Source: Blastocladiella emersonii ATCC 22665 (lineage: Eukaryota; Fungi; Blastocladiomycota). From it: 64,000 nt of DNA. Positions 1 to 50,493 of the stretch are shown piece by piece. The notes below the pieces were generated by a model, which saw only the letters and a list, made by a program, of their open reading frames with translations, was not told the origin of the DNA and made no database searches. Within the stretch, counting starts at the first letter, position 1. Every line of letters begins with the position of its first letter. Position numbers and translations under genes: made by a program. The stretch covers positions 186,001-250,000 of the forward strand of contig JANHCV010000008.1 of the NCBI GenBank assembly GCA_025594325.1. Reading direction: 5' to 3'.

Positions 1-1
1 A

Positions 2-994
2 GCACTTGATGTCGGTGAGGGCGCGGCCCTGGTGCGCCGCCGCCCGCTGCCGAATCGCGCCAACGTCCATGGCGTCCGGGTCCGGGACGAGCTTGGCCGC
101 GACGCCCGTCGCCCCGCCCTCGTGCACCAGGAAGTGCTCGACCATCTTGTCGAAACGGTAGCCCTTGCGCAGCGAGGCGAAGGCCACGTCCGCGGCCAGC
201 GGCGAGTTGCCGGCCGTGACCACCAGGTAGAACTGCATCGCCAGCTCGCTGAGCGCGCGGTAGCCTGCACCGGACGCGGTCTGGCGGAACTTGGAGACGA
301 AATCGCGCGCCGGCATGGCGCCGCGCACGTACTTGAGGTTCTTGAGCTCGTGCGCGTACTCGGTCTCCGACTTCTCGGCCGGCTGCGTTGACTTGACGAG
401 GGAGATGTAGGCGTTGAACGAGCCGTAGTCCTCAAACTTGGACCCGGCCATCGCCAGCTCCACGGCCTCGAGCACCTTGCCCGTCAGCTTGCCGTGGAAG
501 TGCGCAATCTTGAACTTCTCCGGGACGTTGAACGTGAGCTGGAGGATGCTCTCGTACTGCGTGATGGCGCTCTTGACCTTGAAGTTGACGCCGTCAACCG
601 AATTCATGCGCATCAGCGCGTGCATCGCGGCCGGCGTGAAGCCATCAACGCCCACGCCCGGCCCGCGCGCGCTGCTGACCTGGATGCTGTCGAGCTCGCC
701 CTGCAGGATACCGTTGAGCGGCTGGCTCTGCTGCGTCTGCCGCAGCTCGACCTCGAGCGCATACGCGCGGCGCTCCGCCGTCTCGGCGCGCCGCTCGGCC
801 GCGACCGCGCGGGCCTCGGTCGACACGCCCAGTTGCCAGTAGTCGCTGGCAACGTTGAGCGCGAGGAAGACGAGCTTGGCTTTGTCCTCGTACGGCATGA
901 CCAGGTCGCGCCACGGCGCGAGCTGGTACTCGGGGACAATGGCCGCAACGTCAAACGTCGCCAGCTTTTCGAGGAACTGTGCCGGCGTTATCAT
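2..994 (-). CDS. gag: Ty3/gypsy Gag (3' partial; absent from the ORF track because no stop lies in the window)
   Basis: My translation: MITPAQFLEK...YAHELKNLKYVRGAMPARDFVSKFRQ...PDPDAMDVGAI...DIKC. It shows a capsid-like region, the gypsy P-MD-x-A motif and the first Cys of a likely zinc knuckle at the edge. CAAAATG start context. Confidence 0.8.
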   Translation of the reverse strand, partial: MITPAQFLEKLATFDVAAIVPEYQLAPWRDLVMPYEDKAKLVFLALNVASDYWQLGVSTEARAVAAERRAETAERRAYALEVELRQTQQSQPLNGILQGELDSIQVSSARGPGVGVDGFTPAAMHALMRMNSVDGVNFKVKSAITQYESILQLTFNVPEKFKIAHFHGKLTGKVLEAVELAMAGSKFEDYGSFNAYISLVKSTQPAEKSETEYAHELKNLKYVRGAMPARDFVSKFRQTASGAGYRALSELAMQFYLVVTAGNSPLAADVAFASLRKGYRFDKMVEHFLVHEGGATGVAAKLVPDPDAMDVGAIRQRAAAHQGRALTDIKC

Positions 995-1037
995 TTTGCC
1001 GTCGTGGAAGAAATCACCGCTCGGAGGGGGTTTTACG

Positions 1038-1046
1038 GTGATACAA
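1038..1046 (-). promoter_or_regulatory. Putative self-priming primer-binding site (TTGTATCAC)
   Basis: Lies 2 nt after the LTR end, does not start with TGG, and is exactly complementary to GTGATACAA inside the LTR (1118-1110). Confidence 0.5.
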
Positions 1047-1048
1047 AG

Positions 1049-1222
1049 TGTAAGGTGCCGAGGGGGAGGGTCTTGTGCCACGAGGAATGACTAGCCGGAT
1101 AATGAAGGATTGTATCACGAATGACAAGAGAGAGGGAGAGCGAGGGCAACGCTCGGCTTATGAGGGACTGCGCCACCAGCCCGCGCCACCAGCCCAAGCC
1201 GTTGGATCACTGAACCGTGACA
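1049..1222 (-). repeat. Putative 5' LTR (174 bp)
   Basis: Minus strand reads TGTCACGG...CCTTACA, typical gypsy termini. The partner LTR is not in the window, so the boundaries are inferred. Confidence 0.55.
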
Positions 1223-2327
1223 CGCGGTCCCACTTTTCTTGGACTCGGACTGGGACGCGCCTGACCCAGGTTGAGGGCTCCCTTGGCGTGACTGGGGTAC
1301 GCGCAACAGGGAGCCTTGGAAGACCTGGACCTACGCGCTGCCTTGTTGGCGGGTCCTGGGTCGCTGTGACTGGCTGGACGTCGCTGCGTGGATAGAAGCC
1401 CTTGAGGCCTTGGACCTTGTAGCTTGGATTGCTCACGCCCAACCCCTTGCGCACGACCTGGACCTGGCTCACAGTTGTTGACCAGACCGGCTTCCCCTTG
1501 GCCTCCATGGCAGTCTTGTACGGCTCGCGGACTCGGACCTGGGTCCCTACCTTCAACAACGCGCTCAGAGGGTCGCCCTCGGGCTTGCCCTTGGCAGCTC
1601 GGATCTCCTTGAGCTCTTGCTTGGCCGTTTCGCGGGGCATGTCATGGAACGCGTTGGGTGCCTTGCTTGTGGCCCTCGACTTGCTGCTGTTGATCACAGG
1701 TTCAATGGTCTCGAGGTGCTTGGGCCAGTTGTTGTTGCCCGGGATGGACAGCCACGGTGTGAGCATCCGGCGGATGGTCCCGTTCATACGCTCAACAACA
1801 CCTTGACCGTATGGCACTCCTGCCTTACCCTTGATGTGCTTGGCCTCAGTCCCGGCCTCTATGCCAAAGAACTCGGTCCCATTGTCCGTCTGGATCGTGG
1901 CAGGTGCAAGGCTGTGCTTGGCGACCACGCTGGACCATGCTTCCCGCGTCTTGTCCTTGGTCTTGATGGGTTGGAGGTAGACGCGGCGGCTCGCCAGGTT
2001 GACACACGTAAGAATGTAACGGAAGCCCTTGTACGTACCGTTTTCGCCCATGTCAATGAGGTCAAGCTGAAAGTTGCAGCCAGGACTTGTTGAGTTGATG
2101 CTTTGAATGTCTCGGCGCTTCTGAGGTGCGCGCTTGTACTGCTGCCACACGGACTGTTCGCCAAGCCATCTCTCAAGCTGGGCGCGGTAGATGTGCTTCC
2201 CTGTGTGCTCTTGGTCGACAATGTCAAAGAGACGCCGGATCCCAACCCCAACATGGCCGCGTTTGTAATACAAGTCTTTCAGGTACTCGGACTGTTCAGC
2301 AGTCAAAGGTTCTTCGTGTGGATACAT
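1158..2327 (-). CDS. rve (DDE) integrase, Polinton/Maverick c-integrase type
   Basis: LYY..G..G, FQLDLIDM, IQTDNGTEF, QGVVERMNGTI and C-terminal KVGTQVRV...WS...Y...FY motifs. The last ~21 codons are read-through into the LTR. Confidence 0.9.
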   Translation of the reverse strand: MYPHEEPLTAEQSEYLKDLYYKRGHVGVGIRRLFDIVDQEHTGKHIYRAQLERWLGEQSVWQQYKRAPQKRRDIQSINSTSPGCNFQLDLIDMGENGTYKGFRYILTCVNLASRRVYLQPIKTKDKTREAWSSVVAKHSLAPATIQTDNGTEFFGIEAGTEAKHIKGKAGVPYGQGVVERMNGTIRRMLTPWLSIPGNNNWPKHLETIEPVINSSKSRATSKAPNAFHDMPRETAKQELKEIRAAKGKPEGDPLSALLKVGTQVRVREPYKTAMEAKGKPVWSTTVSQVQVVRKGLGVSNPSYKVQGLKGFYPRSDVQPVTATQDPPTRQRVGPGLPRLPVARTPVTPREPSTWVRRVPVRVQEKWDRVSRFSDPTAWAGGAGWWRSPS

Positions 2328-2348
2328 TTACAACAAAGACAACAAAAG

Positions 2349-3518
2349 TTACTTGGGCTTCACACGGTTGGTGTAGTACTTCTTGGACACCTTGGACGTG
2401 TGACCCATCTCATGGCAACGCTGCTCGCGCTCCAGCCATGGCACATCGGCACCCTTGGTTGCGACAACACGTTGGACCTTCTGCACGCCGCACTTCTTGT
2501 CCATGAGATCCAAAATCGTGCGGTCAATGGACTTGTTCCAGGTGTTGCGGAGACGCTTGTTGACCTCTTTGCTGGCCAGGTCCTCAATGGTGCGGTTGAT
2601 GAACACAAAGTCATGGCCCTCTGCCTTGCGCTTGGCAATGACACGCTCCAGGGCGGCTGCCACCTCGGGGCTGGGGATGACGTGTGAGAACTCGTGGCCG
2701 CGACCCTCGGTCTTGACACAGATTGGACCTGCCACAGTCTTGGTCTCCGGGTCGTAGTGCGGGTACTTGTCGTTGGGACTTGTGGTCAGGTACGCCATGT
2801 CGCTGCATGTGGCAGTCATGACCTGGAGGTACGCTCAGAGCTTGGTCATGGGCCCCTTGCCCTGGAGCGTTGCCCAGTTCTCAGCAGCAACAACAGCAGC
2901 CAGGAGGTCGTCACTGCTTGGGAGCGTCCCTGCCTCTTCAGCATTGCGCTTCTCACGGGCAGTATCAGCGTCCTGCTTCTTTGCCTCCGTGTACTTGGCC
3001 CCGAGTTCGGTCCACCCGTTCCAGGTGCAGTACTTGGCCAGGGCCTTGAGCGTCTCGACCTGCAGTCCCTGGACGTTCTTGGACCCCTTGGTCGCGCGGT
3101 AGGTGGCCACGGCATTGGACACGGCCTCGACGTCCTGGATGTCCAGACCTGAGGCGGCAAAGGCAAGGAGCACACGAGCCGTCTTGGCCTTGTCGTTGGC
3201 GTCCAGCTCGGCCAGCTCCCCGTTCTTGTTCACCACGGGCGCGTCGACACACGCAGTAATGGACTCTTCGGTCAGCTCAGCAAACTTGACTTGGGGCGGC
3301 TCCGGGGTGTCGACTTCCATGGGAGTGACTTGCTGATCGGTGCCGTGGTCTGGGTTGTGTGACTCGACAGTCTTGAGTCGCGCGTCCAAGTCCTTGAAGC
3401 GCTTGTCAATAGACCCAAATACGGGCTGGAGCTTGTCCATGACCTGCTGCACCACATCTGTGGCAACATGCTGAGCGAGGGCAAGGGCGACCTGGGAGGC
3501 AAGAGACTCAAGCGACAT
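2349..3518 (-). pseudogene. Tyrosine-recombinase-like gene with one in-frame TGA
   Basis: ORFs 3518-2835 and 2819-2349 are in one frame, separated by TGA 2837-2835 (KL*AYLQVMTATCSD). It has VKT, FVF and MGHTSKVSKKYY (GH...Y) motifs. The two expected catalytic Arg positions read Cys and Gln. Confidence 0.6.
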
Positions 3519-3639
3519 GGTTTACTGACTGTCAACAAAAAGGCTCCATGGGCTCAAGTGCATTTGAACGCAACGTTCTTTTTTCTGGGTAGCTGGGCCT
3601 GGGTCAGGGTCAGGGTGGTGGCAAGTCATGGACCATGGG

Positions 3640-4062
3640 AGGGCCCAGGTCACGGTTTGAGAGGGTCGTGACCTCGGCCTCTGCTGGCGCCCAAGTTGGG
3701 GTCATGGGGGGGTGGAGGTCCAGTTCTTTGCCCTCAGTCGCGTCCCAGGTCATGGTTTGAGCGGATTGTGACCTCGGCCTCGACTGGCTCCCAAGTTGAG
3801 CTCATGGGGGGTTCGTGACCTTGGCCTCTGCTGGCGCCCAAGTCAGGGTCATGGGGGGGGGGGGGGTGGAGGTCCGGTTCTTTGCCCTCAGTCGCGTCCC
3901 AGGTCACGGTTTGAGCGGATCGTGACCTCGGCCTTGACTGGCTCCCAAGTCGGGTCATGGGGGGGTGGAGGTCTGGTTCTTTGCACTCAGTCGCGTCCCA
4001 GGTCACGGTTTGAGCGGATCGTGACCTCGGCCTCTGCTGGCTCCCAAGTTGGGCTCATGGGG
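3640..4062. repeat. Complex tandem array (~100 bp units) between divergent genes
   Basis: GTGACCTYGGCC...CCCAAG..GGTCATGGGG subunit at 3668, 3768, 3815, 3922 and 4021. GTTCTTTGC.CTCAGTCGCGTCCCAGGTCAYGGTTTGAGCGGAT occurs three times. Confidence 0.9.
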
Positions 4063-4237
4063 GAGGTTGTGTCTGGGTCAGGGTCAGGTCACGCAAGGGC
4101 AGCTGGGCCTGGGTCAGGACAGTGGCAAGTCATGGGCCATGCCAACAAGGGCTCCCGGGGCACAGTCATTAACGCTAAATCCTGCGCGTTTAAACGCACC
4201 TGTCCTGTCACCTTTTCTGTTACCTCATCATAACAAC

Positions 4238-7228
4238 ATGCCTTGCAAGCAGGTTCCCGGTAAATATGGCACCGCCTTTGGTCTCAAGTGGTTCCATGGC
4301 AAGGATAGTGGCGACAGCAACATGGGCCCTCAGCGCACGCTCTTGTCTGAGCTGCAAGACGACGAGATGGTCATCAAGCGCCTTGTTGACAAGGGCGTTG
4401 ACAAAAATGGCCAGCCCATCGCAGCACACTACTTTGCCAAGGTCAAGACAGCCAACCTGGCCGGGCTCCTCGACAAGAACCGCTGCATCCAGGAGATGGT
4501 CCACCCCGATCGCCTGTCCAAGGTCTACTTTGACATTGACTGCCCAGGCAACCGCAAGGACGTGACCCTGGACGTCATCAAGAAGGTCATCCTGACCCAG
4601 TTCCCCGGCGCCAACCTCCAGGTCTGCGGCTACGAGACGGACCTCAAAAAGTCGTGGCACATTGTCATCAGCAACTACACGGTCACGCTCAAGGACATGC
4701 CATTCCTGAAGCTGTTCTGCAGCCACCCCGACCACGTCAAGCTTGGCTTTGACTCCAGCGTGTACAGCAAGCACCGCTTCATGAAGTGCATCAACCAGTC
4801 CAAGCCCAAGAAGACGCCCGGCGTGTGGATCTTGGGCAACAAGGACCGCCTGTCCAAGCACTTGATCCAGTGCGACTTTGACCCCAACTGCGTGCCGGTC
4901 TCGGACCTGTCCTTTGAAGAGTTTGTGTCTGCTGAGGCCAAGGCAGCGCGGGCCAAGCGCCACGAGGGTCGCCTCAACTTCAACCTGGACATTCCCAAGT
5001 TTGAGGGTGTGACGATCGACCCCGACTTCTTCTACTACGACGCCACGCCACTTGAGATCCTCCACAACATCCCCATCAGCCCCGAGAACGCGTTCCACAA
5101 CAACGTGACCTGGCGGATCATGACATGGGCCATGCGCAAAGGGGTCACATTTGACCAGTTCTGGGCGTGGACGTCGCAGCAGGACAACTCGGCTCAGCGC
5201 ATGCAAAAGTACTGGAACCGGTGGAACGAGATTGCCAGCAACGACAACTACCAGGTACCAGACAGCTTGATCAAGGGCATCTTTCTTGCCCGCTTCCCAG
5301 ACGCGTTCAAGTCCAAGGCCATGAAGCAGTTCAAGGAGTCGCTCCAGGTACCTGTGGACGTGACCAGCGAGGAACCGTACCTGTCAGGTGACGACATTAC
5401 AACTGCCAAGTTCAACGTGCTGGCTGCGGGTATGGGCTCCAACAAGACGGGCGCTGTTTGCGATTACATTGCCAAGTACCCTAATTCGCGCGTGGTCTGG
5501 ATCACCCCTCGCATCACCCTGGCCCACAACACGGAGGGTCGGCTCAACAACGAACACAACCTTGGATTTGTCAACTACTGCAACGTTGACAAGAAGACCA
5601 TGGGAGACAACAATCGACTCATTGTCTCGCCCTGTTCCCTGCACTACATCTCCAAGCCCTACGACATTGTCGTGGTGGATGAGTCAGAGACGGTCCTCAA
5701 AATGTTCCAAGACGACACGCTCCACAAGACCTCTAAGGGCAACAACTTGGTTGCCAACCTCATTGCCTTCAAGACGCTTTGCGAGCACAAGGACAGCAAG
5801 GGCATCTTCATGGACGCGTTCATCACAAACCTGACCATGGACGTCCTCCGCTCCTTTACTGTCGAGCACAACAACCTGACCATCATGAGTGGTAAGATCA
5901 AGGTGATCAAGAACAAGCTCCCCAAGAACTACGTGCCGCGCAAGATGACGTACATTGCCACCAAGAAGAACAAGGACCCGGCGCTCAGCCTACGCGCTGA
6001 GGACGTCATGGAACGCAACATCATCCAGGACCTGCAAGATGGCAAGAAGCTCTACCTGTTCATCCCGCGCAAGATTGACCCCAAGTCCATCTGGTCAGTC
6101 CAGACCTTTGGCGAGCACCTTGAGCGGGTCATGGGTTGGAAGATTGGCGAGGAGATCAAGGTGTACCACGGCGACCGTCCTGCTGATGAGTCCAAGGAAC
6201 TTGTTGACCCTGACACTGTTTGGGGCAAGGAGACGGTCCGCGTGGTCATTGCCAACCTCAAGATCACCGTCGGTGTCAACTTCTCGGAGAAGCGCAAGTT
6301 TGACAAGGTGTACGCGCGCTATGAGTCCTGGTTCCCGATCTGCGACTTCTTCCAAGCAATCTACCGCGTGTGCAACCCCATCGACAATGAGATTGTGTTC
6401 ATGGCCCAATCCAACGGTCGCAGCGCGTTCATCAACCGGACCATGGTCATCAACACCTTCCCAATTGGCGACATGCACAGCGCCATTGTCAAGAACTCGG
6501 TGCTCGAGAACGAGATGGCTGCAGTGACTGCTCGCCACCTTGTCTTTGACAAGTTCCACAAGATTGCCAACATTGTCATTGACAACTGCCCCAAGTACTA
6601 CTACGAGGTGCACCCCGAGATCAAGGAGGTCATTCACTTGGGCTGGTCCTTTGACTGGGCAAACGTCAAGCTGCCATCTGAGGAGGTCATTGACAATCAC
6701 GTGAATGGCTGCCTTGACAAGCCAACCTGGACCACCTGCCTCTCAATCCGCAAGAGCTTCTTTGTCCACACATTCAAGGGCCTGACCGAGGCCGACATGG
6801 AGTTCATCTGGGACAGCAACGCCGAGGGGTTCATGGAGCAGATCAAGCACTTTTACACCAAGGACGCGGCCCACGTCCTGCACAAGATCCTGGAGCACAA
6901 CAACATGGACCTTCGCACAGCCGAAAAGTTTGACATCCATGCAACTGTCCCTGCCAAGTTCAACGAGGGCATCAACAAGTACTTCAAGCGGGTCTGGGCT
7001 GGCTGTGGTGGCAACGCTGCCATGCTATCCCAGCTGCTCAACACCTACTTCAACAAGAAAATCACCCAGAGCGACAAGGAGAAGCCCCAAGTTGAGATTG
7101 CTGGCAAGCGCTACACTAACTTTGAGTGGACAGACAACCACAAGTACTTTGCCCTGTACAAGACCTGGACCACTGCTCCAGCCAAGTCGGCGCCGTTTGT
7201 CCTCGAGCTGGACCTGGACGAGCTCTAA
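4238..7228 (+). CDS. AEP primase + PriCT-2-like + SF2 UL9/origin-binding-type helicase fusion (996 aa from ATG 4238)
   Basis: VYFDID, SWHIV and FDSSVY primase motifs; Trp-rich linker domain; GMGSNKT, VVVDESE, MDA, TVGVNF and QAIYRV helicase motifs. AACAACATG start context. Confidence 0.85.
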   Translation: MPCKQVPGKYGTAFGLKWFHGKDSGDSNMGPQRTLLSELQDDEMVIKRLVDKGVDKNGQPIAAHYFAKVKTANLAGLLDKNRCIQEMVHPDRLSKVYFDIDCPGNRKDVTLDVIKKVILTQFPGANLQVCGYETDLKKSWHIVISNYTVTLKDMPFLKLFCSHPDHVKLGFDSSVYSKHRFMKCINQSKPKKTPGVWILGNKDRLSKHLIQCDFDPNCVPVSDLSFEEFVSAEAKAARAKRHEGRLNFNLDIPKFEGVTIDPDFFYYDATPLEILHNIPISPENAFHNNVTWRIMTWAMRKGVTFDQFWAWTSQQDNSAQRMQKYWNRWNEIASNDNYQVPDSLIKGIFLARFPDAFKSKAMKQFKESLQVPVDVTSEEPYLSGDDITTAKFNVLAAGMGSNKTGAVCDYIAKYPNSRVVWITPRITLAHNTEGRLNNEHNLGFVNYCNVDKKTMGDNNRLIVSPCSLHYISKPYDIVVVDESETVLKMFQDDTLHKTSKGNNLVANLIAFKTLCEHKDSKGIFMDAFITNLTMDVLRSFTVEHNNLTIMSGKIKVIKNKLPKNYVPRKMTYIATKKNKDPALSLRAEDVMERNIIQDLQDGKKLYLFIPRKIDPKSIWSVQTFGEHLERVMGWKIGEEIKVYHGDRPADESKELVDPDTVWGKETVRVVIANLKITVGVNFSEKRKFDKVYARYESWFPICDFFQAIYRVCNPIDNEIVFMAQSNGRSAFINRTMVINTFPIGDMHSAIVKNSVLENEMAAVTARHLVFDKFHKIANIVIDNCPKYYYEVHPEIKEVIHLGWSFDWANVKLPSEEVIDNHVNGCLDKPTWTTCLSIRKSFFVHTFKGLTEADMEFIWDSNAEGFMEQIKHFYTKDAAHVLHKILEHNNMDLRTAEKFDIHATVPAKFNEGINKYFKRVWAGCGGNAAMLSQLLNTYFNKKITQSDKEKPQVEIAGKRYTNFEWTDNHKYFALYKTWTTAPAKSAPFVLELDLDEL

Positions 7229-7362
7229 GACGCTCCCTTGCCTGTTAAGACGCTGCCTGCTAAGACGCTCCCGTACCCTGACCCCGTACCCTGACCCTTG
7301 TCCTGCCCAATACATTGATGCTGCTAAGACGCTCCCCTGCATTGACCCCCGTACCCTGACCT
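7225..7362 (+). repeat. Short direct repeats after the helicase stop
   Basis: TAAGACGCT four times and CCGTACCCTGACC three times. Confidence 0.75.
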
Positions 7363-7375
7363 CTTGTCTTTGAAA

Positions 7376-7445
7376 GTCCCAATTTCCCCTATAGAATGCT
7401 GGTACTCTATATAGACACTGACTGTTTCATAGGGGAAATTGGGAC
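7376..7445. other. Stem-loop: 17 bp perfect inverted repeat, 36 nt loop
   Basis: GTCCCAATTTCCCCTAT (7376-7392) and ATAGGGGAAATTGGGAC (7429-7445). Confidence 0.85.
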
Positions 7446-7732
7446 CTTTACAGTGAGTGGCTTCATAGCAGCCGCTTGCGGCAGGTGGTCAGGGACGGGC
7501 TCGGGGACTGGCTCGGGGACTGCTCACAGATCGACTTGCAGCTGTGCTCAGGGACCAGACCAGGGAACTCTGTCAGTGGGTAGCCGCAGCTGCGCTGCTC
7601 TTTGTCTCGCTGCGCTCGCCGGCCGCCGCCGACCGCTTGGGGTAAGCAATGGTCAGCCCAAGTGGTTGGTCAGGGACGGGCTCAGGGGTCAGGTCAGGGA
7701 CTCACTCCTGGACCACTCGCCCCTCCCTTCCA

Positions 7733-7904
7733 CCCACCCTCCCGCCCACCTGCTTTGGCCTTCGGCCTCCGTCTGCGTGTCATCGCCCTAAGGGCGATGA
7801 CAGTCTCAGTGATGTCACCCCACCCTCCCGCCCACCTGCTTCGGCCTTTGGCCTCTGTCCGCGTGTCATTGCCCTAAGGGCGGTGACAGTCTCAGTGATG
7901 TCAC
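7733..7904. repeat. Two tandem 86 bp units, each with a 25 bp palindrome
   Basis: 7733-7818 and 7819-7904 differ at 6 positions, all transitions. Core TGTCATCGCCCT-A-AGGGCGATGACA at 7778-7802. Confidence 0.9.
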
Positions 7905-8004
7905 CCGGGGTAAGCAACTGGGTCTCACGTGGTTACCCTGAGTGACTGCTGCCAACCGCTCGGGGTAAGCAATTGGTCAGCCCGAGTGGCAGTGGGTCAG
8001 CCTA

Positions 8005-8030
8005 TGTCGTATCCCTTAAGGGATACAACA
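8005..8030. other. 26 bp near-perfect palindrome forming the element terminus
   Basis: TGTCGTATCCCTT|AAGGGATACAACA with one mismatch; it abuts the truncation point of the host ORF. Confidence 0.85.
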
Positions 8031-9481
8031 ATGAGCCCAAAGAAAATGGATCCCGCAACACGACGCGTATCAGCCACGTGCGGACACCTGGTGAGCGGAT
8101 GTACCTGCGCCTTGCGCATGAGGGGCTCGAAGTGAAGGCAGTACGCACACGGCTTGGCGATTGCGCGAACAGATTTCGAATCACCGGCGGCAAGAGCGCC
8201 AATCAGCGCGGGGCTTGGGCTCTGTAGCGGATGGGCCGAGCTCAAAACCTCTTTCGACCTCGTGGACGTTTTGATGGGCGGCAACGGTGAGCGCGAACGC
8301 TCGCGCGTTTGAGTCCTCGTTGTATTTGAATGCGAGCGTGACGGCGAGCGCGAGCGAGAGAGAGAGAGAGTCCGAACTAAATGGTCTCCATGCGACCTCA
8401 GCTGTGGCCGTGACTGGCGATTCTCGACTGCAAGGCGCGACGCGAATGGCTTGGTTGGACCTGCTGCAAGCGCCACGATCAGGCGAGAGAAGGTCAAAGG
8501 CCGCATTGGTTCTGGGATAGTGGAGTTCGGTGCGCCAGTATTAATCGGTTTGGGAAAGATTGCCGGACCTATCTGAGCTGTGAGATCGCGAATCGAGAGC
8601 CCCTCGCTTTTGGCAAGTGCGGCGAGCCTTGGATCTCTCGCCTCTGGCAAAATCGCCATTTTCGCGAGGAACAATGGCTTGACGTGCGAAGCGTTTACGA
8701 GAGCCGAGATATTCTTCGAAGTCCGAAGGATTGACCACACCTGCTACTGGAAGACGTCAACTGTCGTTCCTGGCACTGGCACGGCGTCGATCCAGTCTTG
8801 GACCCATTTCGGCCGCCGAGCAGGGTCCAAAGCAAGCAGAAAATCGGCCGCTGCGTCATAATCTGATTGGTGTCGAGCGACGAGGACCGCATAAGCAAGA
8901 AAGTCCGCCTCAGATACGTTGCACTTTGAGAGAATAAGCGCACGGGCGAGGTGGCCGGGCGGGAAGAGTGTTTGGAGACAGTTGAGGAAGTCGCGCGGGT
9001 TATCAGTCGACCACCGTCCAGATGAGCTAGGAATCCGAAGTAGCGGGCCGCGGGTGCGCAGCAACTCGGCGAGCGAAAGGTGTCGGTCGTCTGGGCACCG
9101 CTTTGGTGGCGACGCTGAGGGTCGAGTCGGACTGCCAACGGCCGAGCCCCGGCTGAATCCGGTCGCGAGTTCGGACAGTGGAGCGGTGAGATTGGTTTCC
9201 AATGTTTGGCAGAGCCGTTGCAGTTCATTAAGGACGCCCAGGTCTTCCCGGTTCGAGCGCGCAAATTCGCGTGTGGGCGCAGGCTCAAGTCGTTCGGCCA
9301 GCACAGTGCGGACGAGACGCATGCGGATCTCCATCATGCGAAACGTGGCACCCTGCAAGAGTAGCGAGCGAGCTTGACGCGAAACGGGGAGCGCTCGAGA
9401 CCCAGTAAAGTAGTTGTCCACCGCGGCAGCGGCGCGGGATAGTTTGGAGCAAGGCTCTTTGAGTTCATTGCATACAGTCAT
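8031..9481 (-). pseudogene. Gag-like/RS/CCHC family copy A; in-frame TAG and 3' truncation by the element
   Basis: ORFs 9481-8744 and 8740-7997 share a frame (TAG 8746-8744). MTVCNE start, RGPLLRIP...STDNPRDFL, CAYC-x12-H-x4-C, cut right after SIFFGLI. Confidence 0.75.
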
Positions 9482-9756: not shown

Positions 9757-11265
9757 ATGCAACGCCTCGGCGCCATGAAATCACCATGCACTCCATGCAA
9801 CGAATCGCTCATGCTATTTCCACTACAGCCCAGCGAATGTGACGCGCTTGTCACGAGGCTCTGCTCGCCGCACGATCTCCCAGCCGACGACGCGGAGCTC
9901 TAGCGGCTGCTGCAGTCCGTGATTCTCCACACGATGAACCTCCGGACCCAGACCATTCGCATCGCGCTTGAACTCCGTTTCTACAGTGAACCGCACGAAA
10001 AGGTGCGGCCACTGCAGCGCAAGGCGGCTGACGTGGCGGCCACGATTGACGAGCTCGAGCAACTGCGCGCTTCCATCAAGCGGCGTCGCGAGGCTTTGCA
10101 TCAAAACGAGCCTCAAAAGGACATTTCTCTGCCACCAAAACCACAATCCCGCGCACCATCTCCTGCTCGGGAAGCGAGCGAGCGAGCCGCGCGCCGTCCG
10201 AGACGGTACCCGCCACTGGATCCCGGCGCGCACCGCGACTCGTACCAGACGGGCCGGTTCCACTATATCCGCGAGCACGCGCCACTGTTCGGGATCCGCG
10301 GCCCGAGACGGATGCGCGTCGCCGAGACCGCCGCCGAATTCGTCGATCTGCTCCGCGACCTGGTGCCCGAGATCCCGCTCGTCCAGGCGCTGTACCTGTC
10401 ACGCTTCAACGTTCCGAAACCCATGTTCCACGTCTTTGCCATCTTTGCGCGCGAGACCATCTCCGACGCCGAGGCGCGGCGCGTGTTCTTGAACGCGGCC
10501 GACCCGGACTGGAACCGCGCGTGGGTTGACCGGCTCCACGCGCTCGCGCCGCGGCCGGGCAGCACCGTGGGCAAGTTCTTTGCCGAGTTCCGCGCGCTGC
10601 TCGACGAGGTGATCGACATGGACGACCCGTGGGTGTCGAGCGAGCGGCCGATCAAGCACGTGTTCGCCAACAAGCTGTATGAGCCGCTCGGGCGGACCTC
10701 GGACCCGATTTTCGCTCGGGCAAGCGACGCGTCCATGACGGTTGCGGACGTGGCCGCCGAGTTTGCTTCGCTCGCGATCCCAGACCCCGCCAGCGCGCCG
10801 CCGGCGCTGCCTACGCCCGACACGGCGCTGGTCGCGCACCGCGACGAGGACTCGCGTAAATACTGCTGTCTCTTCTGCAACTCGATGAAACGCGAGAGGC
10901 ACGGCGCGGTGACGCACGAGACGCGGAACTGCCGCAAGCTGCAGCGCGTGCCGGTCGTTGCGGTGCTGCTTGCAGAAGCCGTTCACTTGGCCAGGCTTAC
11001 AGTCCCGATCGAGCTGTGGCGCGGGGACATCTCGTCTGCCCGCAGTTTGATCGAGGCCATGCAGAATGTGCGCAGGGAGGTGCAGGACTTTGGGCGCCGC
11101 GTAGCTGACAAGAAGGACCGGTCCAACCTCGAGTACTGCTACGAGCTGCTCAAGGGCCTCCTCGCGCTGCCGTTCGACCGCGAAGCGTGGGCGCTCAAGG
11201 CGGTGCAGGACATTTGGCGCGAAGCGCACTCGATCTCAATGAAGCGCGGATGGCGACTCTGGTAA
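9757..11265 (+). pseudogene. Family copy B (divergent, no RS tract), one in-frame TAG
   Basis: The frame extends upstream of 9919 through TAG 9901-9903 to TPCNE and ATG 9757. LAPRPGSTVGKFFAEF, IKHVFANKL and CLFC-x12-H-x4-C are present. Confidence 0.7.
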
Positions 11266-11467: not shown

Positions 11468-13256
11468 TCACAGCGACGCCTGGACCTCGGCAGCCCAGTC
11501 GCGGAACTCGGGGTAGTTGCACTCGCGCGATCGCTGCACGAGAACGCGCCGAACCTCCGGGTCAGCGAGCACGGGACCGCTCCACATGGCGCGGAGCAGT
11601 GCGACGCGACCTTCGGCACGGTAGCCGCGGATGTACTCCTTGGCGCACTCGATCGACATGACCCACGGCTTGCCGCGCAGCGTCGTCACCTTGTTTGCGA
11701 ACTCGGCGATCATCGCCGCGTCGCCTGCGGCCACCGCCTCGAAGACGTAGTCCATGAGTAGCATGTGCCCGTTGAAGCCGTACCGGTGCGCGTCGCGCGG
11801 CTGGCCTTCCATATCGTAGTCGGACGCGGGCGTGACCACGTCCATGAGCCGGTGAATCTGGTCGACGGTCGCGTCGCAAAGAATCGTGCGCCATGTATCC
11901 AACACAACCCAACGAAGCGGTGGGTCCCAGCCATACTGCACGCGAGCCATGAACATCGTGTTGACATAGTGGGTGTGCCATTCGGTCGTCGAGTTTGGTG
12001 CAGTGCGCCAGATCCATTTCTGAGAGCCAGGTACTTGGTAGCCGTGCGTGATGTAGCACCAGGGAAGATGCTGCAGCGCGTAGAGGGCCAAGTCCGGGTC
12101 ATAGATTTGGCCAACTGCGCCGTGGAAAACCTTCATCGCGGCGTCTGAGGACTGCCCAGCGAAGCTCGCGGATCACTAGTTTAAGTGAAGCGACCGAATC
12201 GACGGGGCCTTCGTCGTGCGTAGGGTATGAAAGCGTCTTGGCCAGCTTGTGGCCAGTTTGAGTTAGATTCAGCAAGCGAATCGTCGTGTCCAGCCGCTGA
12301 CGTAGCTCAGTCGCTGCGCCCTGACCTTCACGAAGTAGTAAAGCTTCCACACGAGCACGAACCTGCTCCACGCCGCCGTCGGTGATGACAAAGCAACTAG
12401 GATCGAAGCGACGCTGGAAACTCTCGTGCGCCTGCGCAAGGACCACCAAATCCTTGACGACGCACGTACGCGGAGTGTTGATCCGGCCGAAAGATTCGTC
12501 AATAAGTCCGTTGAGAACGTCCACCAACTCGTTCGGCGACCACGAACCGCTGCTTGCAACGCGCAAGATGAATTTGAGACAAAAGTACCGACCGAAACTT
12601 AGAAGCCCGCGCAGCGCGATGCGTCAGAACCGATCAGCAAGAAGTGACTTTGCACACTGTAAAAGCATCGCTTGGTACTGGCTACGTTGGTGCGGGCCGC
12701 CGTAGACGTTGAGATTGGTGGACCGTTCAGCGAGGAGCGAGTCTAGTGTTGACTCGGTATTTGTTGATGCCATGAGGCCCGACGGCAGTTTCCATTCAAT
12801 CAAGGCGTGAAAGGCGTAAGGAGCACGCAGCTGGATCGCCAAGAGGATAAGGTCGTCGTGCTGGGCTTTGGTGAGCGGCCAGGAACTGTTTGCCCAGCTG
12901 TGCAGGGTGGTCCAGCGACGATCGGATTCGCCCAAGTTGAGCCGGACAAGGGCGCGAGCAAAGCAAAAGAACATGTGCGAGCGATCAGCTTGTTGTTTGG
13001 CAAGGACCACAGGATCGGCGCACTCCAACGAGTAGCGTGGAGCAAGCTCTGTGAACTCGGAGAATCGACCATAAGCAAGAGAGAAAGTGGCGCGCAGCCA
13101 CGGTCGAACGGCCCACAGCGCTGGAGCGGCACAAACTGAGCGGCAGGTCGCGCGGAGGGCGAGGGCGCTCGCGACGTCCAGACGTTGCGCGATGGTAAGC
13201 TGAAGCTCTTGCGGCAAGTGTACGAGCTGGAGAGTTTGATTCATGGCGGGTATCAT
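11468..13256 (-). pseudogene. F-box protein, disrupted
   Basis: LVHLPQELQLTIAQRLDVASALALRATCRSV F-box motif. In-frame TGA 12626-12624 joins ORF 12566-12099; frame change near 12140 into ORF 12136-11468. Confidence 0.65.
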
Positions 13257-13420
13257 TGCATTGCGAGTCGTGTTGCAGGAGCGGCAGCCAGAGTGTGGCC
13301 GCGATCAAGGTTACTGTTCTCGCGCGACCAACTGCACGTGTGGCGCCGAGTTTTCTGCTTCACGTCAGACCGCTCATGTAGGCCATGTCTAGTTCGCAAG
13401 CAATGAGGTGTATTTCAGGG

Positions 13421-14181
13421 CTACTCGCCGTTGTAGAAGGTAGACTTGAGCGAGTCGTACACGTATTCGCGAAGGGACTCGCGGGTCCAGGTCACTCCAT
13501 CAAGGACGTAAGGGAACTCGCCGCGGATCGTCCAGTTCTTGTCCACAACAAAGTCGGTGCAGTCACGGTGCGCGGCGGCTTTGAGATGAGCTTCAAGTGC
13601 GCGTGGGTCGGCGTGACCGCGCTTCGCCGCCCAAGGCTCACACAAATCTTGTGTCATTGCCTGATGAAGTTTGGTCGAGAGTGAGCGGGATCGCCAACGC
13701 GAGGATCTCCAGAGAACGCACCGAGGTGTTGCGGTACCGCTTAGGCCTCGCCTCGTTCGCGTCCGTAGTGGCGTGGGTGCCGCTGCTTGCGCTCAAGCCG
13801 TCAGCAGCTGACGTGGGCTGCGCAAGCGCGGGCGTGGTCACGGTGCCCGGGGCAAAGCACTCCAACGCAAGCACTCGGTCGAAGTAGGCAAGACGCGGGC
13901 CGTCGCGGTCGAGCGTTCGCTTGAGCCGCTCGTTCTCCTGCTGCACCGCGTCGTTGGTCTGCTCCAGGGCGGCATACTCGGCACTAACCGCATTAAGCTC
14001 GCGAAGGAGACCGTCGCGTTGTGCAGCAAGTCGGTCCCGATCACTTCGGAGGACCTTGTTCTCAGCCACAAGGCGGGCGGGCAATGTAGTCGGCGCAATC
14101 GACGGTCACGAGCTGGCCATCGAGCTCCACCTGGACAAAGTGGCCCTGCTGAGGATTCAGTTGCATGGAGTGTGTATTCAT
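13421..14181 (-). pseudogene. Hypothetical coiled-coil protein in three frames
   Basis: MNTHSMQLNP...ADY / ARLVAENKVLRSDRDRL...ENERLK / MTQDLCEPW segments overlap end to end, implying two frameshifts. Confidence 0.4.
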
Positions 14182-14476
14182 GGTTCGGTCAGGCTCAGGA
14201 GCGTGGGCGTGGATGAGGGAGGGGAAGGGAGAGACGGCAGCAAGGGAACTGACGCAACTGTCTCGCACCCCACATCACCTGATAACAGAACGCGTCGTTC
14301 TCAGCACTGATGATCTCAGAAGTCGAGAAGCAACATCCCGGAGAGCGCAGCGTACGCGCATCTACTTTTGCGCGGATCGGAATCCGTCCGGGTATCATAC
14401 GAGGTTCAGGTTTCGCGAAGGGCAACGAAGCGGTTCATCAATCACAAGTAGAGTATCGCCGCGAGAAATTGCCGTG

Positions 14477-14943
14477 TCACCCCGCCCTCTGGCCGCTCGA
14501 GGTATCCTCGCCACGACCGGTTCTCGCCGCCTACACGTTCGCCGCCCGCGTCAGCCCACCGACCCACCCCTCCACCCCGCCCTCCCTGACCCCCGCACCT
14601 CCTGCTCCACTCCCACTCGCGCCCTATAATCCTCCATCTCTTGCTCATACCGCTCCCGCTCACCCCGCGCCGCCTCGAAGTACGGCGCGCGCTGCTCGTC
14701 CGACATACCGCGCCACCGCGTCCCGCACACGCTCGCGATCGCGGCGAGACTCGAGGTCGGGTCGGCGGCCATGACCTCGGCGCGGATCTCGATGGCGAAC
14801 AGGATGAAGGGGCTGCGCGGGAGGCGGGGTTTCGGGATCGCGGGGGAGTCGGGCGAGGCGGGAGCGGGTGAGGGTGAGCGCGAGAGCGCGGTGCTCTCGG
14901 GCGGCGCGGCGGGTTGCGAGGAGTCCAGTGCATTCGAATCCAT
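14477..14943 (-). CDS. Single HMG-box protein (HMGB/NHP6-like), join(14943-14599,14530-14477)
   Basis: PRLPRSPFILFAIEIRAEV...RWRGMSDEQRAPYFEAARGERERYEQEM. Predicted 68 nt intron GTGCGG...GCTGAC...TAG. Confidence 0.8.
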
Positions 14944-15272
14944 TACTTGCTCCGCTGAGTCGTTCGGCGAGAGTGAGGGAGCGGCCAGCGAGCTGTGCGA
15001 CTCGCCCCTCGTTTCGGCGCCCACCGCACATCAGCTGACGGCCGCGGTGTGGCGCGGCGCGTCTCCTCTTCCCTCCCGCTCACCTTCCCCTCTCGTTCCC
15101 GTGCAGTCAGTCCGAACAGTCACGCAAAAGTGTGAAATGTGTTATTTTGAGGTGAGTGATTAGTGAAGCTACGACGGACCGATATACCTTGCCCCGCCCG
15201 CCGAGCTTGGCGGAGCCCACACATGCGACTGCAGCCCGGTCCGATAGCCACAGCCGCGCACCAAACCCGCCA

Positions 15273-21900: not shown

Positions 21901-22068
21901 CTGTCCGGACTGATGCGGAGCAGGAGACAGGCCTCGCGGCGTGCGTGTGTCGCGCCGCGTCGGACGCGTCGGATCGAACGTGGCTTGGGACGTGAGACAA
22001 TCTATCACGGGGAGGCCGGGGCGCCACAACGGCCCCGACTCGCTTCCGCTCTCGGCTTTCTGTTCATC

Positions 22069-23307: not shown

Positions 23308-23698
23308 TGTCCTCGCGTGCACGCGGAGGCGTGGACCGTCGACTTTGTTTTCGTTGATGTTAAATGCTTGATGTTTCTCTACCTTGATTTAATATACTCG
23401 CATGTTTCCGAACGGGCCCATGGCTGTGCAGCATACCAGATGATGAGTCTATGTTCTGCGGGCGACTCGTACATCATCCTGGTCGTGCGCACCGACACGA
23501 GGTGGAATGAAGAGAACATACGCGTGAGCTGTTATCGATTGAGGAGCCGAGTCGCTGCGCGCGAGGGCCCTGGTCGCGTTGCGCCACAGCGTGTGTGAGA
23601 CATGAGACATGGCATCACGTGGCGCTCGAACATCAAACACAAGCCGCCTCCCCTCGCCCGCCGTCTTCTCCCCGGCAACCCCTCACACACACGCAGCA

Positions 23699-45382: not shown

Positions 45383-45505
45383 TCGCGGTGTGACTGCAGC
45401 GCCACCCACACGCGTGGCTGGCGGGCTTGGCCGAGCGTTCGCGTTCGCGCTTCTTGGCCTCGCTGCGCTGTCCCACCAAACCACCCAACGCTAAACGAAT
45501 GAATC

Positions 45506-46933: not shown

Positions 46934-47203
46934 CTCCTTGCACGTATGCCCGCACCCACGCCTCGCTCGGGTGTATAATAGTACTTGATTGCGCATGGCT
47001 TCCCGGTTTCATGCTCACGAAGGTCGCAGTGCTGAGCAGGTCTCCGCTCTTCGTTTGTGGGAGATCCCGTCGATTGCGCGACCGTTCCAGCGACGTTCGC
47101 GTTCATGCGCACGTGGCAGGCGACGCGTAGACGCGTCGTCAATCCCCGACATCGCGCCGTGGTCCCCTCGTTGCCGTTTAGTTAGACGCGAAAATTATGA
47201 AGC

Positions 47204-48526: not shown

Positions 48527-48565
48527 TCGCCGCTCCCTTTTGATACGCACGAAACATCGCTTGCT

Positions 48566-50386: not shown

Positions 50387-50493
50387 TTGCTTTATACGAT
50401 CGGGTTGCGTTTAAATGTTGATGGACTTGTTCCCGCGCCTTCACACTTTCATTGTTGCGCGCGGTGCCAGGGATGGCGGCACACGGACTGCGA

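What the first reader, a model, noticed from the sequence alone, without database searches (positions are those of the whole stretch)
1158..8030. Polinton-like element with two integration enzymes and a primase-helicase instead of a polymerase
Seen: a Polinton-type rve integrase and a YR-like gene in tandem, divergent from a 996 aa AEP-SF2 helicase, with a repeat array between them and a structured end. Known: classic Polintons use protein-primed PolB and end in AG-rich TIRs; some Polinton-like viruses use primase-helicases and carry one type of integrase. Inferred: this gene set with a TGT...ACA end may be an undescribed lineage of endogenous DNA virus or self-replicating transposon. Capsid genes are not visible here.
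Basis: partly seen in the sequence, partly recalled or inferred. Interest (0 to 1): 0.8.

Follow-up and report, generated by a model that had tools for sequence, protein, structure and literature searches.

The report
Endogenous Polinton-like virus in Blastocladiella
The region is the replication and integration half of a decaying 16-kb capsid-encoding virus-like element integrated in the water mould Blastocladiella emersonii, a new member of the Polinton-like viruses already reported from zoosporic fungi, unusual in carrying a second, tyrosine-recombinase-like gene beside its retroviral-type integrase.

Summary
Window 1224-8030 carries, in order, a retroviral-type (rve) integrase gene, a tyrosine-recombinase-like (YR-like) gene, a tandem repeat array, a 996-aa AEP-primase/UL9-like SF2 helicase gene, and an 801-bp terminal inverted repeat (TIR) ending in a palindrome.

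The window comes from Blastocladiella emersonii ATCC 22665. The three genes are not unrelated neighbours. They are collinear in at least five copies and belong to one ~16.4-kb element with 0.8-kb TIRs, 5'-TGT...ACA-3' ends and a 5-bp target duplication.

The other half lies outside the window, beyond a 5.3-kb Ty3/gypsy insertion. It encodes a double jelly-roll major capsid protein (model pLDDT 93; Foldseek hit to the PBCV-1 capsid protein, 8.5e-18) and an A32 packaging ATPase.

The element is therefore an endogenous Polinton-like virus (PLV). It is related to a PLV-like locus in Spizellomyces punctatus and to PLV-sized virome contigs. PLVs were already reported from S. punctatus and Allomyces. 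The AEP+UL9-like protein architecture is also known from other viruses.

The less ordinary points are these:
- A YR-like gene sits beside the rve gene. Its fold is only weakly supported.
- It shares a promoter-like motif and a divergence pattern with the helicase gene, not with the rve gene.

The window copy is inactivated by two in-frame stops and the gypsy insertion, and it shows CpG-deamination decay.

The parts
1..1223 (-). Right part of a nested Ty3/gypsy (chromovirus-type) LTR retrotransposon. It is a neighbour, not part of the virus-like element. The whole insertion is about 5.3 kb and continues left of the window.
   Evidence: blastn against uninterrupted copies shows the element's homology stopping at 1223/1224 and resuming beyond the insertion. 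Pfam on its ORFs finds protease, RVT_1, RNase H, Integrase_H2C2, rve, chromodomain and a gag zinc knuckle. The LTR pair is 176 bp, 97.7% identical.
1158..2327 (-). rve (retroviral-type DDE) integrase gene as it stands, a 389-codon ORF. It is broken once: its 3' end is cut by the retrotransposon insertion and the ORF runs on into the LTR. It has no stops or frameshifts.
   Evidence: Pfam rve E 1e-4 (window copy) and 1.6e-6 (uninterrupted 370-aa paralogue). PDB phmmer returns only retroviral integrase cores, best 4e-4, with the TDNG and ER..NG motifs aligned. It is 27% identical (1e-9) to an rve+chromodomain ORF of an IMG/VR contig and matches an S. punctatus rve+chromo ORF.
2349..3518 (-). Tyrosine-recombinase-like gene (378-380 aa in uninterrupted paralogues). 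It is broken once in the window copy by an in-frame stop.
   Evidence: Pfam Phage_integrase E 5.6e-3 on one piece only. A low-confidence AlphaFold model (pLDDT 52) nevertheless has only tyrosine-recombinase-superfamily chains among its top ~38 Foldseek PDB hits, E 4e-3 to 1e-1, TM 0.2-0.3. Alignment A2 shows conserved R, K, R, H and Y with R-to-H 22 and H-to-Y 9 residues. Profile searches against PDB and NCBIfam were negative.
3558..3571 (-). 14-nt promoter-like motif, 39 nt upstream of the YR-like start codon.
   Evidence: The same motif lies 38 nt upstream of the helicase start codon. Both are conserved at the same distances in all five copies examined.
3599..4141 (.). Tandem repeat array between the divergent YR-like and helicase genes. 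Units are about 99-154 bp, each holding a GGTCACG...CGTGACC inverted pair. Copy number differs among copies. It is a candidate origin or iteron region.
   Evidence: TRF and the repeat finder. The array is longer in the L004 copy. The motif GGTCAKGG occurs 25 times in the window against 3.9 expected, 16 of them inside the element. The origin function is inferred.
4186..4199 (+). Second copy of the 14-nt promoter-like motif, 38 nt upstream of the helicase start codon.
4238..7228 (+). Primase-helicase gene, 996 aa, open. It has an N-terminal AEP (PrimPol-like) domain and a UL9-like superfamily 2 helicase domain.
   Evidence: Pfam Herpes_ori_bp 4e-16. A profile of 38 relatives matches herpesvirus origin-binding protein chains at 1e-26 (helicase part) and human PrimPol at 6e-4 (N-terminal part). 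Invariant or near-invariant D99/D101, S139/H141, D172, K403, D481/E482 and R710.
7230..8030 (.). Right terminal inverted repeat of the element.
   Evidence: It is 99% identical over 804 aligned bases to the inverted left TIR, which lies outside the window (L006 16472-17275). Homology to the other copies ends at 8030.
7733..7906 (.). Two tandem 86-bp units inside the TIR, each with a palindrome of about 25 nt.
8005..8030 (.). Terminal 26-nt palindrome (TGT...ACA), conserved at both ends of all copies read.
8031..8035 (.). Right copy of the 5-bp target-site duplication (ATGAG). The left copy abuts the left terminus outside the window.

Best explanation
Window 1224-8030 is the right half of one integrated genome of a Polinton-like virus (PLV) of the zoosporic fungus Blastocladiella emersonii.

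Shown:
- The whole element spans 21.7 kb of contig JANHCV010000008.1, made of about 16.4 kb of its own DNA plus a nested 5.3-kb Ty3/gypsy retrotransposon.
- It is bounded by ~0.8-kb terminal inverted repeats whose last 26 nt are a palindrome.
- The left half, outside the window, holds the particle-building genes: a double jelly-roll major capsid protein, an A32-type packaging ATPase, a candidate penton protein and a fibre-like protein.
- The right half holds the rve integrase, a YR-like protein and an AEP-primase/UL9-like SF2 helicase.

Inferred mechanism:
- The rve integrase inserts the linear genome by its TG...CA ends. This made the 5-bp target duplication seen at this copy.
- The primase-helicase opens and primes the genome at the repeated sites in the intergenic array and in the TIRs, and a polymerase from the host or a helper virus copies it.
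- The YR-like protein works with the replication module rather than as a second integrase, for example by resolving replication intermediates at the palindromic ends. It shares a promoter-like motif with the helicase gene and diverges together with it.

State of the window copy: it is no longer intact. Two genes each carry one in-frame stop, and the rve gene's 3' end is cut by the retrotransposon. Its private substitutions are mostly CpG-to-TpG, the mark of a methylated, silenced insertion.
For: One element:
- The same gene order and ends occur in five loci of the same genome.
- The TIR is 804 aligned bases at 99% identity.
- TGT...ACA ends and an ATGAG duplication on both flanks.
- The family has at least 8 loci with a full-length capsid gene and 7 with a helicase gene.

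Virus nature:
- The 406-aa protein of this same copy gives an AlphaFold model with pLDDT 93.3 and pTM 0.90.
- Its Foldseek matches are PBCV-1 Vp54 at 8.5e-18, then EhV-201, iridovirus, faustovirus and Sputnik capsid proteins, and capsid proteins again in BFVD.
- It has 475 relatives at E<=1e-3.
- Pfam Pox_A32 hits the neighbouring 265-aa protein at 1.2e-12.

Replication protein.

rve.

Selection: dN/dS between copies is 0.17-0.49 for helicase, rve, YR-like, MCP and A32.

Kinship:
- The MCP profile hits an S. punctatus ORF at 1e-20 and 13 of 49 IMG/VR contigs that also carry the helicase. Twelve of those 13 also have an A32 gene.
- The S. punctatus locus also has rve+chromodomain and A32.

YR-like and helicase coupling:
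- A shared 14-nt motif lies 38-39 nt upstream of both start codons in all five copies.
- The capsid arm through rve is 92-98% identical among copies, while YR-like, array and helicase are about 80% identical.

Decay: break counts are. Of 112 private substitutions in the window copy, 67 are C>T or G>A at CpG.
Against: - The tyrosine-recombinase assignment is weak. The model has pLDDT 52 and the Foldseek E-values are only ~4e-3. Profile searches against PDB, Pfam (on the uninterrupted paralogue) and NCBIfam gave nothing.
- Only one clean target duplication was seen. Two other copies have inverted-duplicate flanks and no duplication.
- No particle, transcript or free genome was observed. The origin role of the repeats, the reliance on a borrowed polymerase and the role of the YR-like protein are all inferences.
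- The candidate penton protein and the 571-aa Q/N-rich protein were not tested by structure.
- No maturation protease was found.
Confidence: 0.85

Rival explanations
1. The second protein is not a tyrosine recombinase, so the element has one integration enzyme (rve). The 378-aa protein would be another DNA-binding or replication accessory protein of the helicase module.
For: The uninterrupted paralogue has no Pfam hit at E<=0.1. A profile of nine sequences finds no PDB chain. NCBIfam finds nothing. The AlphaFold model has pLDDT 52. The residue three positions before the second conserved arginine is not the usual histidine.
Against: The top ~38 Foldseek hits all belong to one superfamily: Cre, XerA/XerD, TelA, Tn1549 integrase, lambda integrase. 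Conserved R, K, R, H and Y have the canonical spacing of 22 and 9 residues (the spacing of lambda integrase is from established knowledge). One piece gives a weak Pfam Phage_integrase hit.
Confidence: 0.3
2. The YR-like protein is a genuine second integrase, giving the element two routes into DNA, for example rve into the fungal chromosome and site-specific recombination into another replicon such as a giant virus genome.
For: Tyrosine recombinases are the usual integration gene of PLVs and virophages (PMC10120064; bioRxiv 10.64898/2026.06.19.733378). A metagenomic relative has a weak Phage_integrase ORF right after its helicase gene and no rve in the part read. Giant viruses of zoosporic fungi exist (PMC13533422).
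Against: The one clean insertion has the rve signature of TG...CA ends and a 5-bp duplication. No insertion with a recombinase-type attachment site was seen. The gene shares a promoter-like motif and a divergence pattern with the helicase gene, not with rve.
Confidence: 0.25
3. The three genes are unrelated neighbouring insertions.
For: A real nested insertion (gypsy) sits next to the rve gene.
Against: rve, YR-like, array, helicase and TIR are collinear in five loci. They lie inside one pair of 99%-identical TIRs with a target duplication.
Confidence: 0.01
4. It is a capsid-less, self-replicating DNA transposon rather than a virus.
For: No capsid gene lies inside the window.
Against: The same copy encodes a double jelly-roll MCP and an A32 ATPase beyond the gypsy insertion. 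Both are open, and both evolve under purifying selection among copies.
Confidence: 0.03

Closest known systems
Polinton-like viruses of zoosporic fungi: the 'S. punctatus group', the Allomyces macrogynus MCP/ATPase/helicase insertions (Bellas & Sommaruga 2021, PMC7805220), and the chytrid A32 genes noted in bioRxiv 10.64898/2026.06.19.733378
   Same: A 15-20 kb element with TIRs, integrated in a zoosporic fungus. It has a double jelly-roll MCP, an A32 ATPase, a primase-helicase and no PolB. The helicase is 46-51% identical to Allomyces proteins and 29% to S. punctatus SPPG_01932. The MCP profile hits the S. punctatus ORF at 1e-20. The rve and A32 of that locus also match.
   Different: The host genus is Blastocladiella, and no paper in the searched library links it to Polintons. 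A YR-like gene sits beside rve; none was found in the S. punctatus locus. The rve has no detectable chromodomain, whereas the S. punctatus one has a Pfam Chromo hit at 5e-13. There is no DNA methyltransferase. The S. punctatus locus I read is not shown to be the one described in the paper, whose supplement cites SPPG_00926/00927.
Polintons/Mavericks (Polintoviricetes)
   Same: rve integrase, TIRs, a 5-6 bp target duplication, a double jelly-roll MCP and an A32 ATPase.
   Different: There is no protein-primed PolB and no detected adenain-like protease. Replication uses an AEP-SF2 primase-helicase. The MCP family is that of the PLVs named above, and no Polinton protein came back as a named hit.
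AEP + UL9-like SF2 helicase proteins of large DNA viruses: mimivirus R8, ASFV pF1055L, Ostreid herpesvirus 1 and mriyavirus SF2_hel (Yutin et al. 2024, PMC11253617)
   Same: The same two-domain architecture with intact AEP motifs and a helicase domain closest to herpesvirus origin-binding protein.
   Different: Here the protein is carried by a 16-kb integrating PLV. No direct comparison with those proteins was made, because none was retrieved by the searches.
Mavirus-type virophages and endogenous mavirus-like elements
   Same: Integration by an rve integrase with a short target duplication, long TIRs, many endogenous copies, and association with Ty3/gypsy insertions (PMC8547959, PMC10120064).
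   Different: Mavirus has a PolB and a virophage-type MCP. Dependence on a giant virus is unknown here.

Membership tests
Polinton-like viruses (PLV; morphogenetic module plus non-PolB replication gene) | Double jelly-roll major capsid protein | tested here: met
   The 406-aa protein of the same copy gives a model with pLDDT 93.3. Foldseek matches PBCV-1 Vp54 at 8.5e-18 and many other DJR capsid proteins. The gene lies outside the window.
Polinton-like viruses (PLV; morphogenetic module plus non-PolB replication gene) | A32/FtsK-type genome-packaging ATPase next to the capsid genes | tested here: met
   Pfam Pox_A32 1.2e-12, above the gathering score. The gene is open in the window's own copy.
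Polinton-like viruses (PLV; morphogenetic module plus non-PolB replication gene) | Minor (penton) capsid protein | not tested
   A 303-aa candidate lies next to the MCP.
Polinton-like viruses (PLV; morphogenetic module plus non-PolB replication gene) | Genome of 14-40 kb with terminal inverted repeats | tested here: met
   About 16.4 kb of own DNA with an 804-base TIR at 99% identity. A second copy is 17.0 kb.
Polinton-like viruses (PLV; morphogenetic module plus non-PolB replication gene) | Primase-helicase or helicase in place of protein-primed PolB | tested here: met
   AEP+SF2 helicase. No PolB hit on any ORF scanned.
'S. punctatus group' of PLVs (defined by MCP cluster, PMC7805220) | MCP in the same sequence cluster as the S. 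punctatus element's MCP | tested here: inconclusive
   A profile of the Blastocladiella MCP's relatives hits a 417-aa S. punctatus ORF at 1e-20, but direct phmmer finds nothing. I could not show that this locus is the published one. No MCP tree was built.
Polintons/Mavericks | [quoted passage not shown] | tested here: not met
   None found in any copy. The replication gene is the AEP-SF2 helicase.
Polintons/Mavericks | rve integrase | tested here: met
   Whether it is of the Polinton clade was not testable, because no named Polinton hit came back.
Tyrosine recombinases (for the 378-aa protein) | Catalytic-domain fold | tested here: inconclusive
   The model has pLDDT 52. Its top ~38 Foldseek hits are all from the superfamily, but at E 4e-3 to 1e-1 and TM 0.2-0.3.
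Tyrosine recombinases (for the 378-aa protein) | R-K-H-R-H/W-Y catalytic set | tested here: inconclusive
   R, K, R, H and Y are conserved among uninterrupted paralogues with spacing 22 and 9. The first histidine position is not histidine. Two copies, the window's among them, depart at one of these positions.
Tyrosine recombinases (for the 378-aa protein) | Significant match to a family profile | tested here: not met
   Pfam Phage_integrase reaches only 5.6e-3, on one piece of the window copy. There is nothing for the uninterrupted paralogues, and nothing from a profile search of PDB or from NCBIfam.
AEP primase | Motifs I (DxD), II (sxH) and III (hD) | tested here: met
   D99/D101, S139/H141 and D172 are invariant or nearly so in 38 relatives. 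The profile matches human PrimPol at 6e-4.
Virophages (dependence on a giant virus) | Replication only with a giant helper virus | not testable with these tools
   No giant-virus sequence is in the window. Giant viruses of zoosporic fungi are described (PMC13533422), but no link was examined.

The most novel reading that the evidence does not exclude
The YR-like protein is not an integrase. It would be a replication partner of the primase-helicase that acts on the palindromic ends or on the repeat array, either as a telomere- or dimer-resolving enzyme or as a protelomerase-like one. This fungal PLV lineage would then separate integration (rve) from end resolution (tyrosine recombinase) and replicate through palindromic or hairpin termini.

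Hints in favour:
- The terminal 26-nt palindrome is conserved at both ends of all copies.
- The motif shared with the helicase promoter region lies at identical spacing.
- The YR-like/array/helicase block diverges jointly.
- TelA protelomerase chains are among the Foldseek hits.
Probability: 0.15. Interest if true: 0.65.

Novelty: new member of a known kind. Interest (0 to 1): 0.42.

Why it matters
Blastocladiella emersonii is a laboratory model among the early-diverging fungi. Large surveys of endogenous PLVs left fungi out (PMC10120064), and for zoosporic fungi only brief mentions exist.

A multi-copy family with complete ends, a confidently modelled capsid protein and genes under purifying selection gives a concrete, well-bounded reference for fungal PLVs. 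Giant viruses of zoosporic fungi have just been described, so such elements are the natural candidates for virophage-like partners. Their expression and distribution can now be examined.

The pairing of a YR-like gene with the primase-helicase, apart from the rve integrase, is a small but testable clue to how PLVs with long palindromic TIRs replicate.

The CpG-biased decay and the gypsy insertion show how the host genome disables the copies.

Tried and rejected
- The 571-aa protein next to the A32 gene was my first capsid candidate, and one word search went on it. Its sequence is Q/N-rich and helical, and it has no family or PDB match. I rejected it as the MCP. The 406-aa protein is the MCP.
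- Sequence-only searches for the MCP failed: Pfam gave one stray Capsid_N hit among 77 relatives, and a profile search of PDB gave nothing. Only structure comparison worked.
- For the YR-like protein, the word search found only Blastocladiella paralogues. Profile or phmmer searches against PDB, Pfam by member and NCBIfam gave nothing useful. AlphaFold with 8 close sequences gave pLDDT 52.
- PHROGs gave only weak transposase hits for rve.
- My own iterative profile searches for rve-like and YR-like ORFs in 49 IMG/VR loci found one rve and no YR. A Pfam scan of 31 ORFs next to the helicase found that same rve plus one weak Phage_integrase hit.
- No TIR can be found inside the window, because the left end lies outside it.
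- The Allomyces arbusculus contig holds only the helicase gene plus host genes.
- The MMBR review on the polinton-like supergroup is not held.
- The second 406-aa ORF in the window (50619-51839) is a coincidence of length and has no similarity to the MCP.

Method notes. The count of private substitutions used agreement of the two other copies column by column and printed counts only.

Full report
**Where the window comes from.** The 996-aa protein of the finding is found, letter for letter, on contig JANHCV010000008.1 of Blastocladiella emersonii ATCC 22665 (GCA_025594325.1). Window position 1 is record position 186001. The host is a zoosporic fungus with about 60-70% G+C. The finding's region is somewhat lower, at 56-59%.

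**Check of the observation.**
- On the minus strand, one reading frame from 3518 down to 1158 holds a YR-like gene followed by an rve integrase ORF. On the plus strand, 4238-7228 is an open 996-codon gene.
- Pfam gives rve (1e-4) and Herpes_ori_bp (4e-16). It gives a weak Phage_integrase hit (5.5e-3) on one piece of the YR-like gene.
- Between the divergent genes lies a tandem array at 3599-4141, with units of about 99-154 bp.
- Downstream of the helicase gene there are tandem 86-bp units with internal palindromes. The last 26 nt (8005-8030) are themselves a near-perfect palindrome, TGT...ACA.

The description is accurate.

**One element, and most of its other half is outside the window.**
- The helicase protein has six paralogues of 59-71% identity in the same genome.
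- I fetched four of their loci and the window's own surroundings and compared them. Homology with every copy runs from window 1224 to 8030 and stops exactly at 8030.
- To the left it is interrupted by 5.3 kb and then resumes.
- The interrupting DNA has 176-bp LTRs that are 97.7% identical. It encodes gag with a zinc knuckle and a protease-RT-RNase H-integrase-chromodomain polyprotein, so it is a Ty3/gypsy chromovirus. Window 1-1223 is its right part.
- Beyond it, outside the window, the same copy continues with six further genes.
- The last 801 bases of the window part (7230-8030) recur, inverted and 99% identical, at the far left end. This is the TIR.
- The sequences just outside the two termini are unrelated, except that both begin with the same 5 bases, ATGAG. 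This is a target-site duplication.
- The element therefore occupies record positions 172355-194030: 21.7 kb, of which about 16.4 kb is its own.
- A second copy read end to end is 17.0 kb.
- The genome holds at least eight loci with a full-length capsid gene and seven with a helicase gene.

**It encodes a capsid.**
- Gene order in uninterrupted copies is: a 303-aa protein, a 406-aa protein, a 265-aa protein and a 571-aa protein (all on one strand), an 83-aa protein, a roughly 680-codon ORF on the other strand, then rve, the YR-like gene, the array and the helicase.
- The 265-aa protein is an A32-type packaging ATPase (Pfam Pox_A32 1.2e-12).
- The 680-codon ORF has a Phage_Tail_Tip match above threshold (7e-9) and internal repeats, so it is fibre-like.
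- The 571-aa protein, my first capsid candidate, is Q/N-rich and helical and matches nothing.
- The 406-aa protein of the window's own copy (P0061) has 475 relatives at E<=1e-3 in the exhaustive search. With 77 of them as alignment it gives an AlphaFold model with pLDDT 93.3 and pTM 0.90.
- Foldseek places that model among double jelly-roll major capsid proteins: PBCV-1 Vp54 at 8.5e-18, EhV-201, iridovirus, faustovirus and Sputnik. The BFVD library gives the same picture.
- The 303-aa neighbour is the natural penton candidate but was not tested.
- No PolB and no maturation protease were seen.

**The replication protein.**
- In an alignment of 38 relatives (22-73% identity), the invariant or nearly invariant residues include D99/D101, S139/H141 and D172. 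This is the AEP motif I-III pattern.
- They also include K403/T404, D481/E482 and Q706/R710, the helicase motifs.
- The profile matches herpesvirus origin-binding protein chains at 1e-26 over the helicase part, and human PrimPol at 6e-4 over the N-terminal part.
- This AEP + UL9-like SF2 architecture is already described for mimivirus R8, ASFV pF1055L, Ostreid herpesvirus 1 and some mriyaviruses (PMC11253617).

**The rve integrase.**
- Scores are modest but one-sided. Pfam rve is 1.6e-6 for an uninterrupted paralogue.
- There are 83 PDB matches at E<=1; all 60 listed are retroviral integrase chains. The second aspartate and the glutamate motifs are aligned.
- It is similar to the gypsy integrase next door (9e-7) and to rve+chromodomain ORFs of a virome contig (1e-9) and of S. 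punctatus.
- The element's TG...CA ends and 5-bp duplication are what this enzyme class produces. That is established knowledge for retroviral-type integrases. The link to this particular protein is an inference.

**The YR-like protein.** This is the weak point of the finding.

Evidence for:
- Among uninterrupted paralogues, the C-terminal 150 residues keep an arginine, a lysine about 30 residues later, an arginine about 80 later, then histidine at +22 and tyrosine at +9. This is the spacing of the catalytic residues of lambda integrase (my knowledge of that enzyme's numbering).
- The predicted secondary structure there is helix, three strands, then helices.
- Although the model is poor (pLDDT 52), its first ~38 Foldseek hits are all tyrosine-recombinase-superfamily chains: Cre, XerA, XerD, TelA, Tn1549 and lambda integrases.

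Evidence against:
- E-values are only 4e-3 and worse, and TM-scores are 0.2-0.3.
- The uninterrupted protein has no Pfam hit.
- Profile and single-sequence searches of PDB and NCBIfam give nothing.

I put the fold assignment at about 0.65-0.7.

**Context of the YR-like gene.** Two observations tie it to the helicase gene rather than to rve.
- A 14-nt motif (GCGTTYAAAYGCAC) lies 39 nt upstream of its start codon and 38 nt upstream of the helicase start codon. This holds in all five copies, and the motif occurs nowhere else in the element.
- Identity among copies is 92-98% from the capsid arm through rve (rve protein 95%). It drops to about 80% for the YR-like gene, the array and the helicase (proteins 60% and 72%).

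The element is thus a mosaic, and its variable block is YR-like + array + helicase.

**Are the genes alive?**
- Between copies, dN/dS is 0.17-0.49 for all five genes tested. Most divergence therefore arose under selection, that is, in replicating lineages.
- The window copy itself is damaged. The YR-like gene has one in-frame stop, and the 571-aa gene has one in-frame stop. The rve gene has lost its 3' end to the retrotransposon insertion.
- The helicase, MCP, A32, fibre-like and 83-aa genes of this copy are open, and there are no frameshifts.
- In three other copies the helicase gene has one to three in-frame stops and no frameshifts.
- Of 112 substitutions private to the window copy in the capsid arm, 77 are C>T or G>A, and 67 of those are at CpG. 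The two other copies compared show the same bias. This is the signature of deamination of methylated CpG. Methylation itself was not measured.

**Relatives elsewhere.**
- The helicase has relatives in Allomyces (46-51%), Spizellomyces punctatus (29%), other chytrids and many metagenome contigs.
- The S. punctatus locus also has an rve+chromodomain ORF, an A32 gene, a DNA methyltransferase and a 417-aa ORF that the MCP profile hits at 1e-20. No YR-like ORF was found there.
- Forty-nine IMG/VR contigs of PLV size carry the helicase. Thirteen of them carry the same MCP family and 21 an A32 gene, but only one has an rve ORF.
- A JGI metagenome contig has a weak Phage_integrase ORF right after the helicase gene.
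- So free-living relatives mostly lack an integrase in the parts read, the endogenous fungal ones have rve, and only the Blastocladiella family showed both.

**Literature.**
- Bellas & Sommaruga 2021 (PMC7805220) report a PLV integrated in S. punctatus and name an 'S. punctatus group'. They also report MCP, ATPase and helicase genes in Allomyces macrogynus.
- A 2026 preprint notes A32 genes from many chytrid genomes.
- The large protist survey excluded fungi and describes 'either' a tyrosine recombinase 'or' an rve integrase per element.
- No paper in the library combines Blastocladiella with Polinton.

**Verdict.** It is a new member of a known kind: an endogenous Polinton-like virus of a zoosporic fungus. 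The window copy is nested with a gypsy element and decaying. The points that go beyond the known are the YR-like gene coupled to the primase-helicase and the long TIRs ending in a palindrome. The first of these still needs a proper fold assignment.

Noticed in passing
L004 13107-21266 and L011 13062-21221; L005 14237-15000 and L010 17563-18326 (other copies, same genome): Two other copies of the element lie between flanks that are inverted duplicates of each other. One pair runs more than 8.1 kb at 99.96% identity, reaching the end of the fetched DNA. The other runs 764 bp at 99.7%. Neither copy has a target duplication. This could be end-copying templated on the other TIR, or a mis-assembly.
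   Followed up: partly
L005 13600-13786, and both TIR arms of that copy (L010 1-1679 and 16436-18114): A 177-186 bp stretch 96-97% identical to the gypsy LTR lies inside the 1127-bp TIR of another copy. Because the two arms are 99.8% identical without gaps, it is present in both arms.
   Followed up: partly
Capsid arms of three copies (L006 9600-16400, L010 9600-16400, L011 7020-13000): Substitutions private to one copy are mostly C>T or G>A at CpG: 67 of 112 in the window's copy, 34 of 64 and 28 of 54 in the others. All gene breaks counted are in-frame stops, never frameshifts.
   Followed up: partly
window 45500-64000, plus strand: A run of paralogous ORFs of 380-606 aa, all on one strand. 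They share a conserved block (FRLPA...TDDP.EFL) and long Arg/Ser repeat tails, have no Pfam match, and sit in DNA of lower G+C (0.59-0.61) than the neighbouring host DNA. Their nature is unknown, and they are not similar to the element.
   Followed up: no
window 21427-25768: Two adjacent paralogous ORFs of 626 and 719 aa share 75-78% identical stretches. The first ends in an HMG box (Pfam 1.4e-7).
   Followed up: no
window 11468-17228, minus strand: The nearest large annotated host gene to the right of the element is a chitin synthase, with an HMG-box hit in the public gene call. A 317-aa gene call (window 10312-11265) lies between it and the element, which sits about 2.3 kb from that call in a stretch without called genes.
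   Followed up: no
window 26700-27150: A long, imperfect tandem array of 9-30 bp steps in a G+C-rich coding-like stretch (repeat finder family D1).
   Followed up: no
(tool output): the listing of cluster members returned one '90% identity' cluster holding both the 406-aa capsid proteins and the 303-aa neighbours, which share no detectable similarity.
   Followed up: partly
L008 13527-16752 (S. punctatus locus): The S. punctatus relative carries a 1046-aa DNA cytosine methyltransferase gene call (PF00145) directly after its primase-helicase gene. The Blastocladiella element has none.
   Followed up: no
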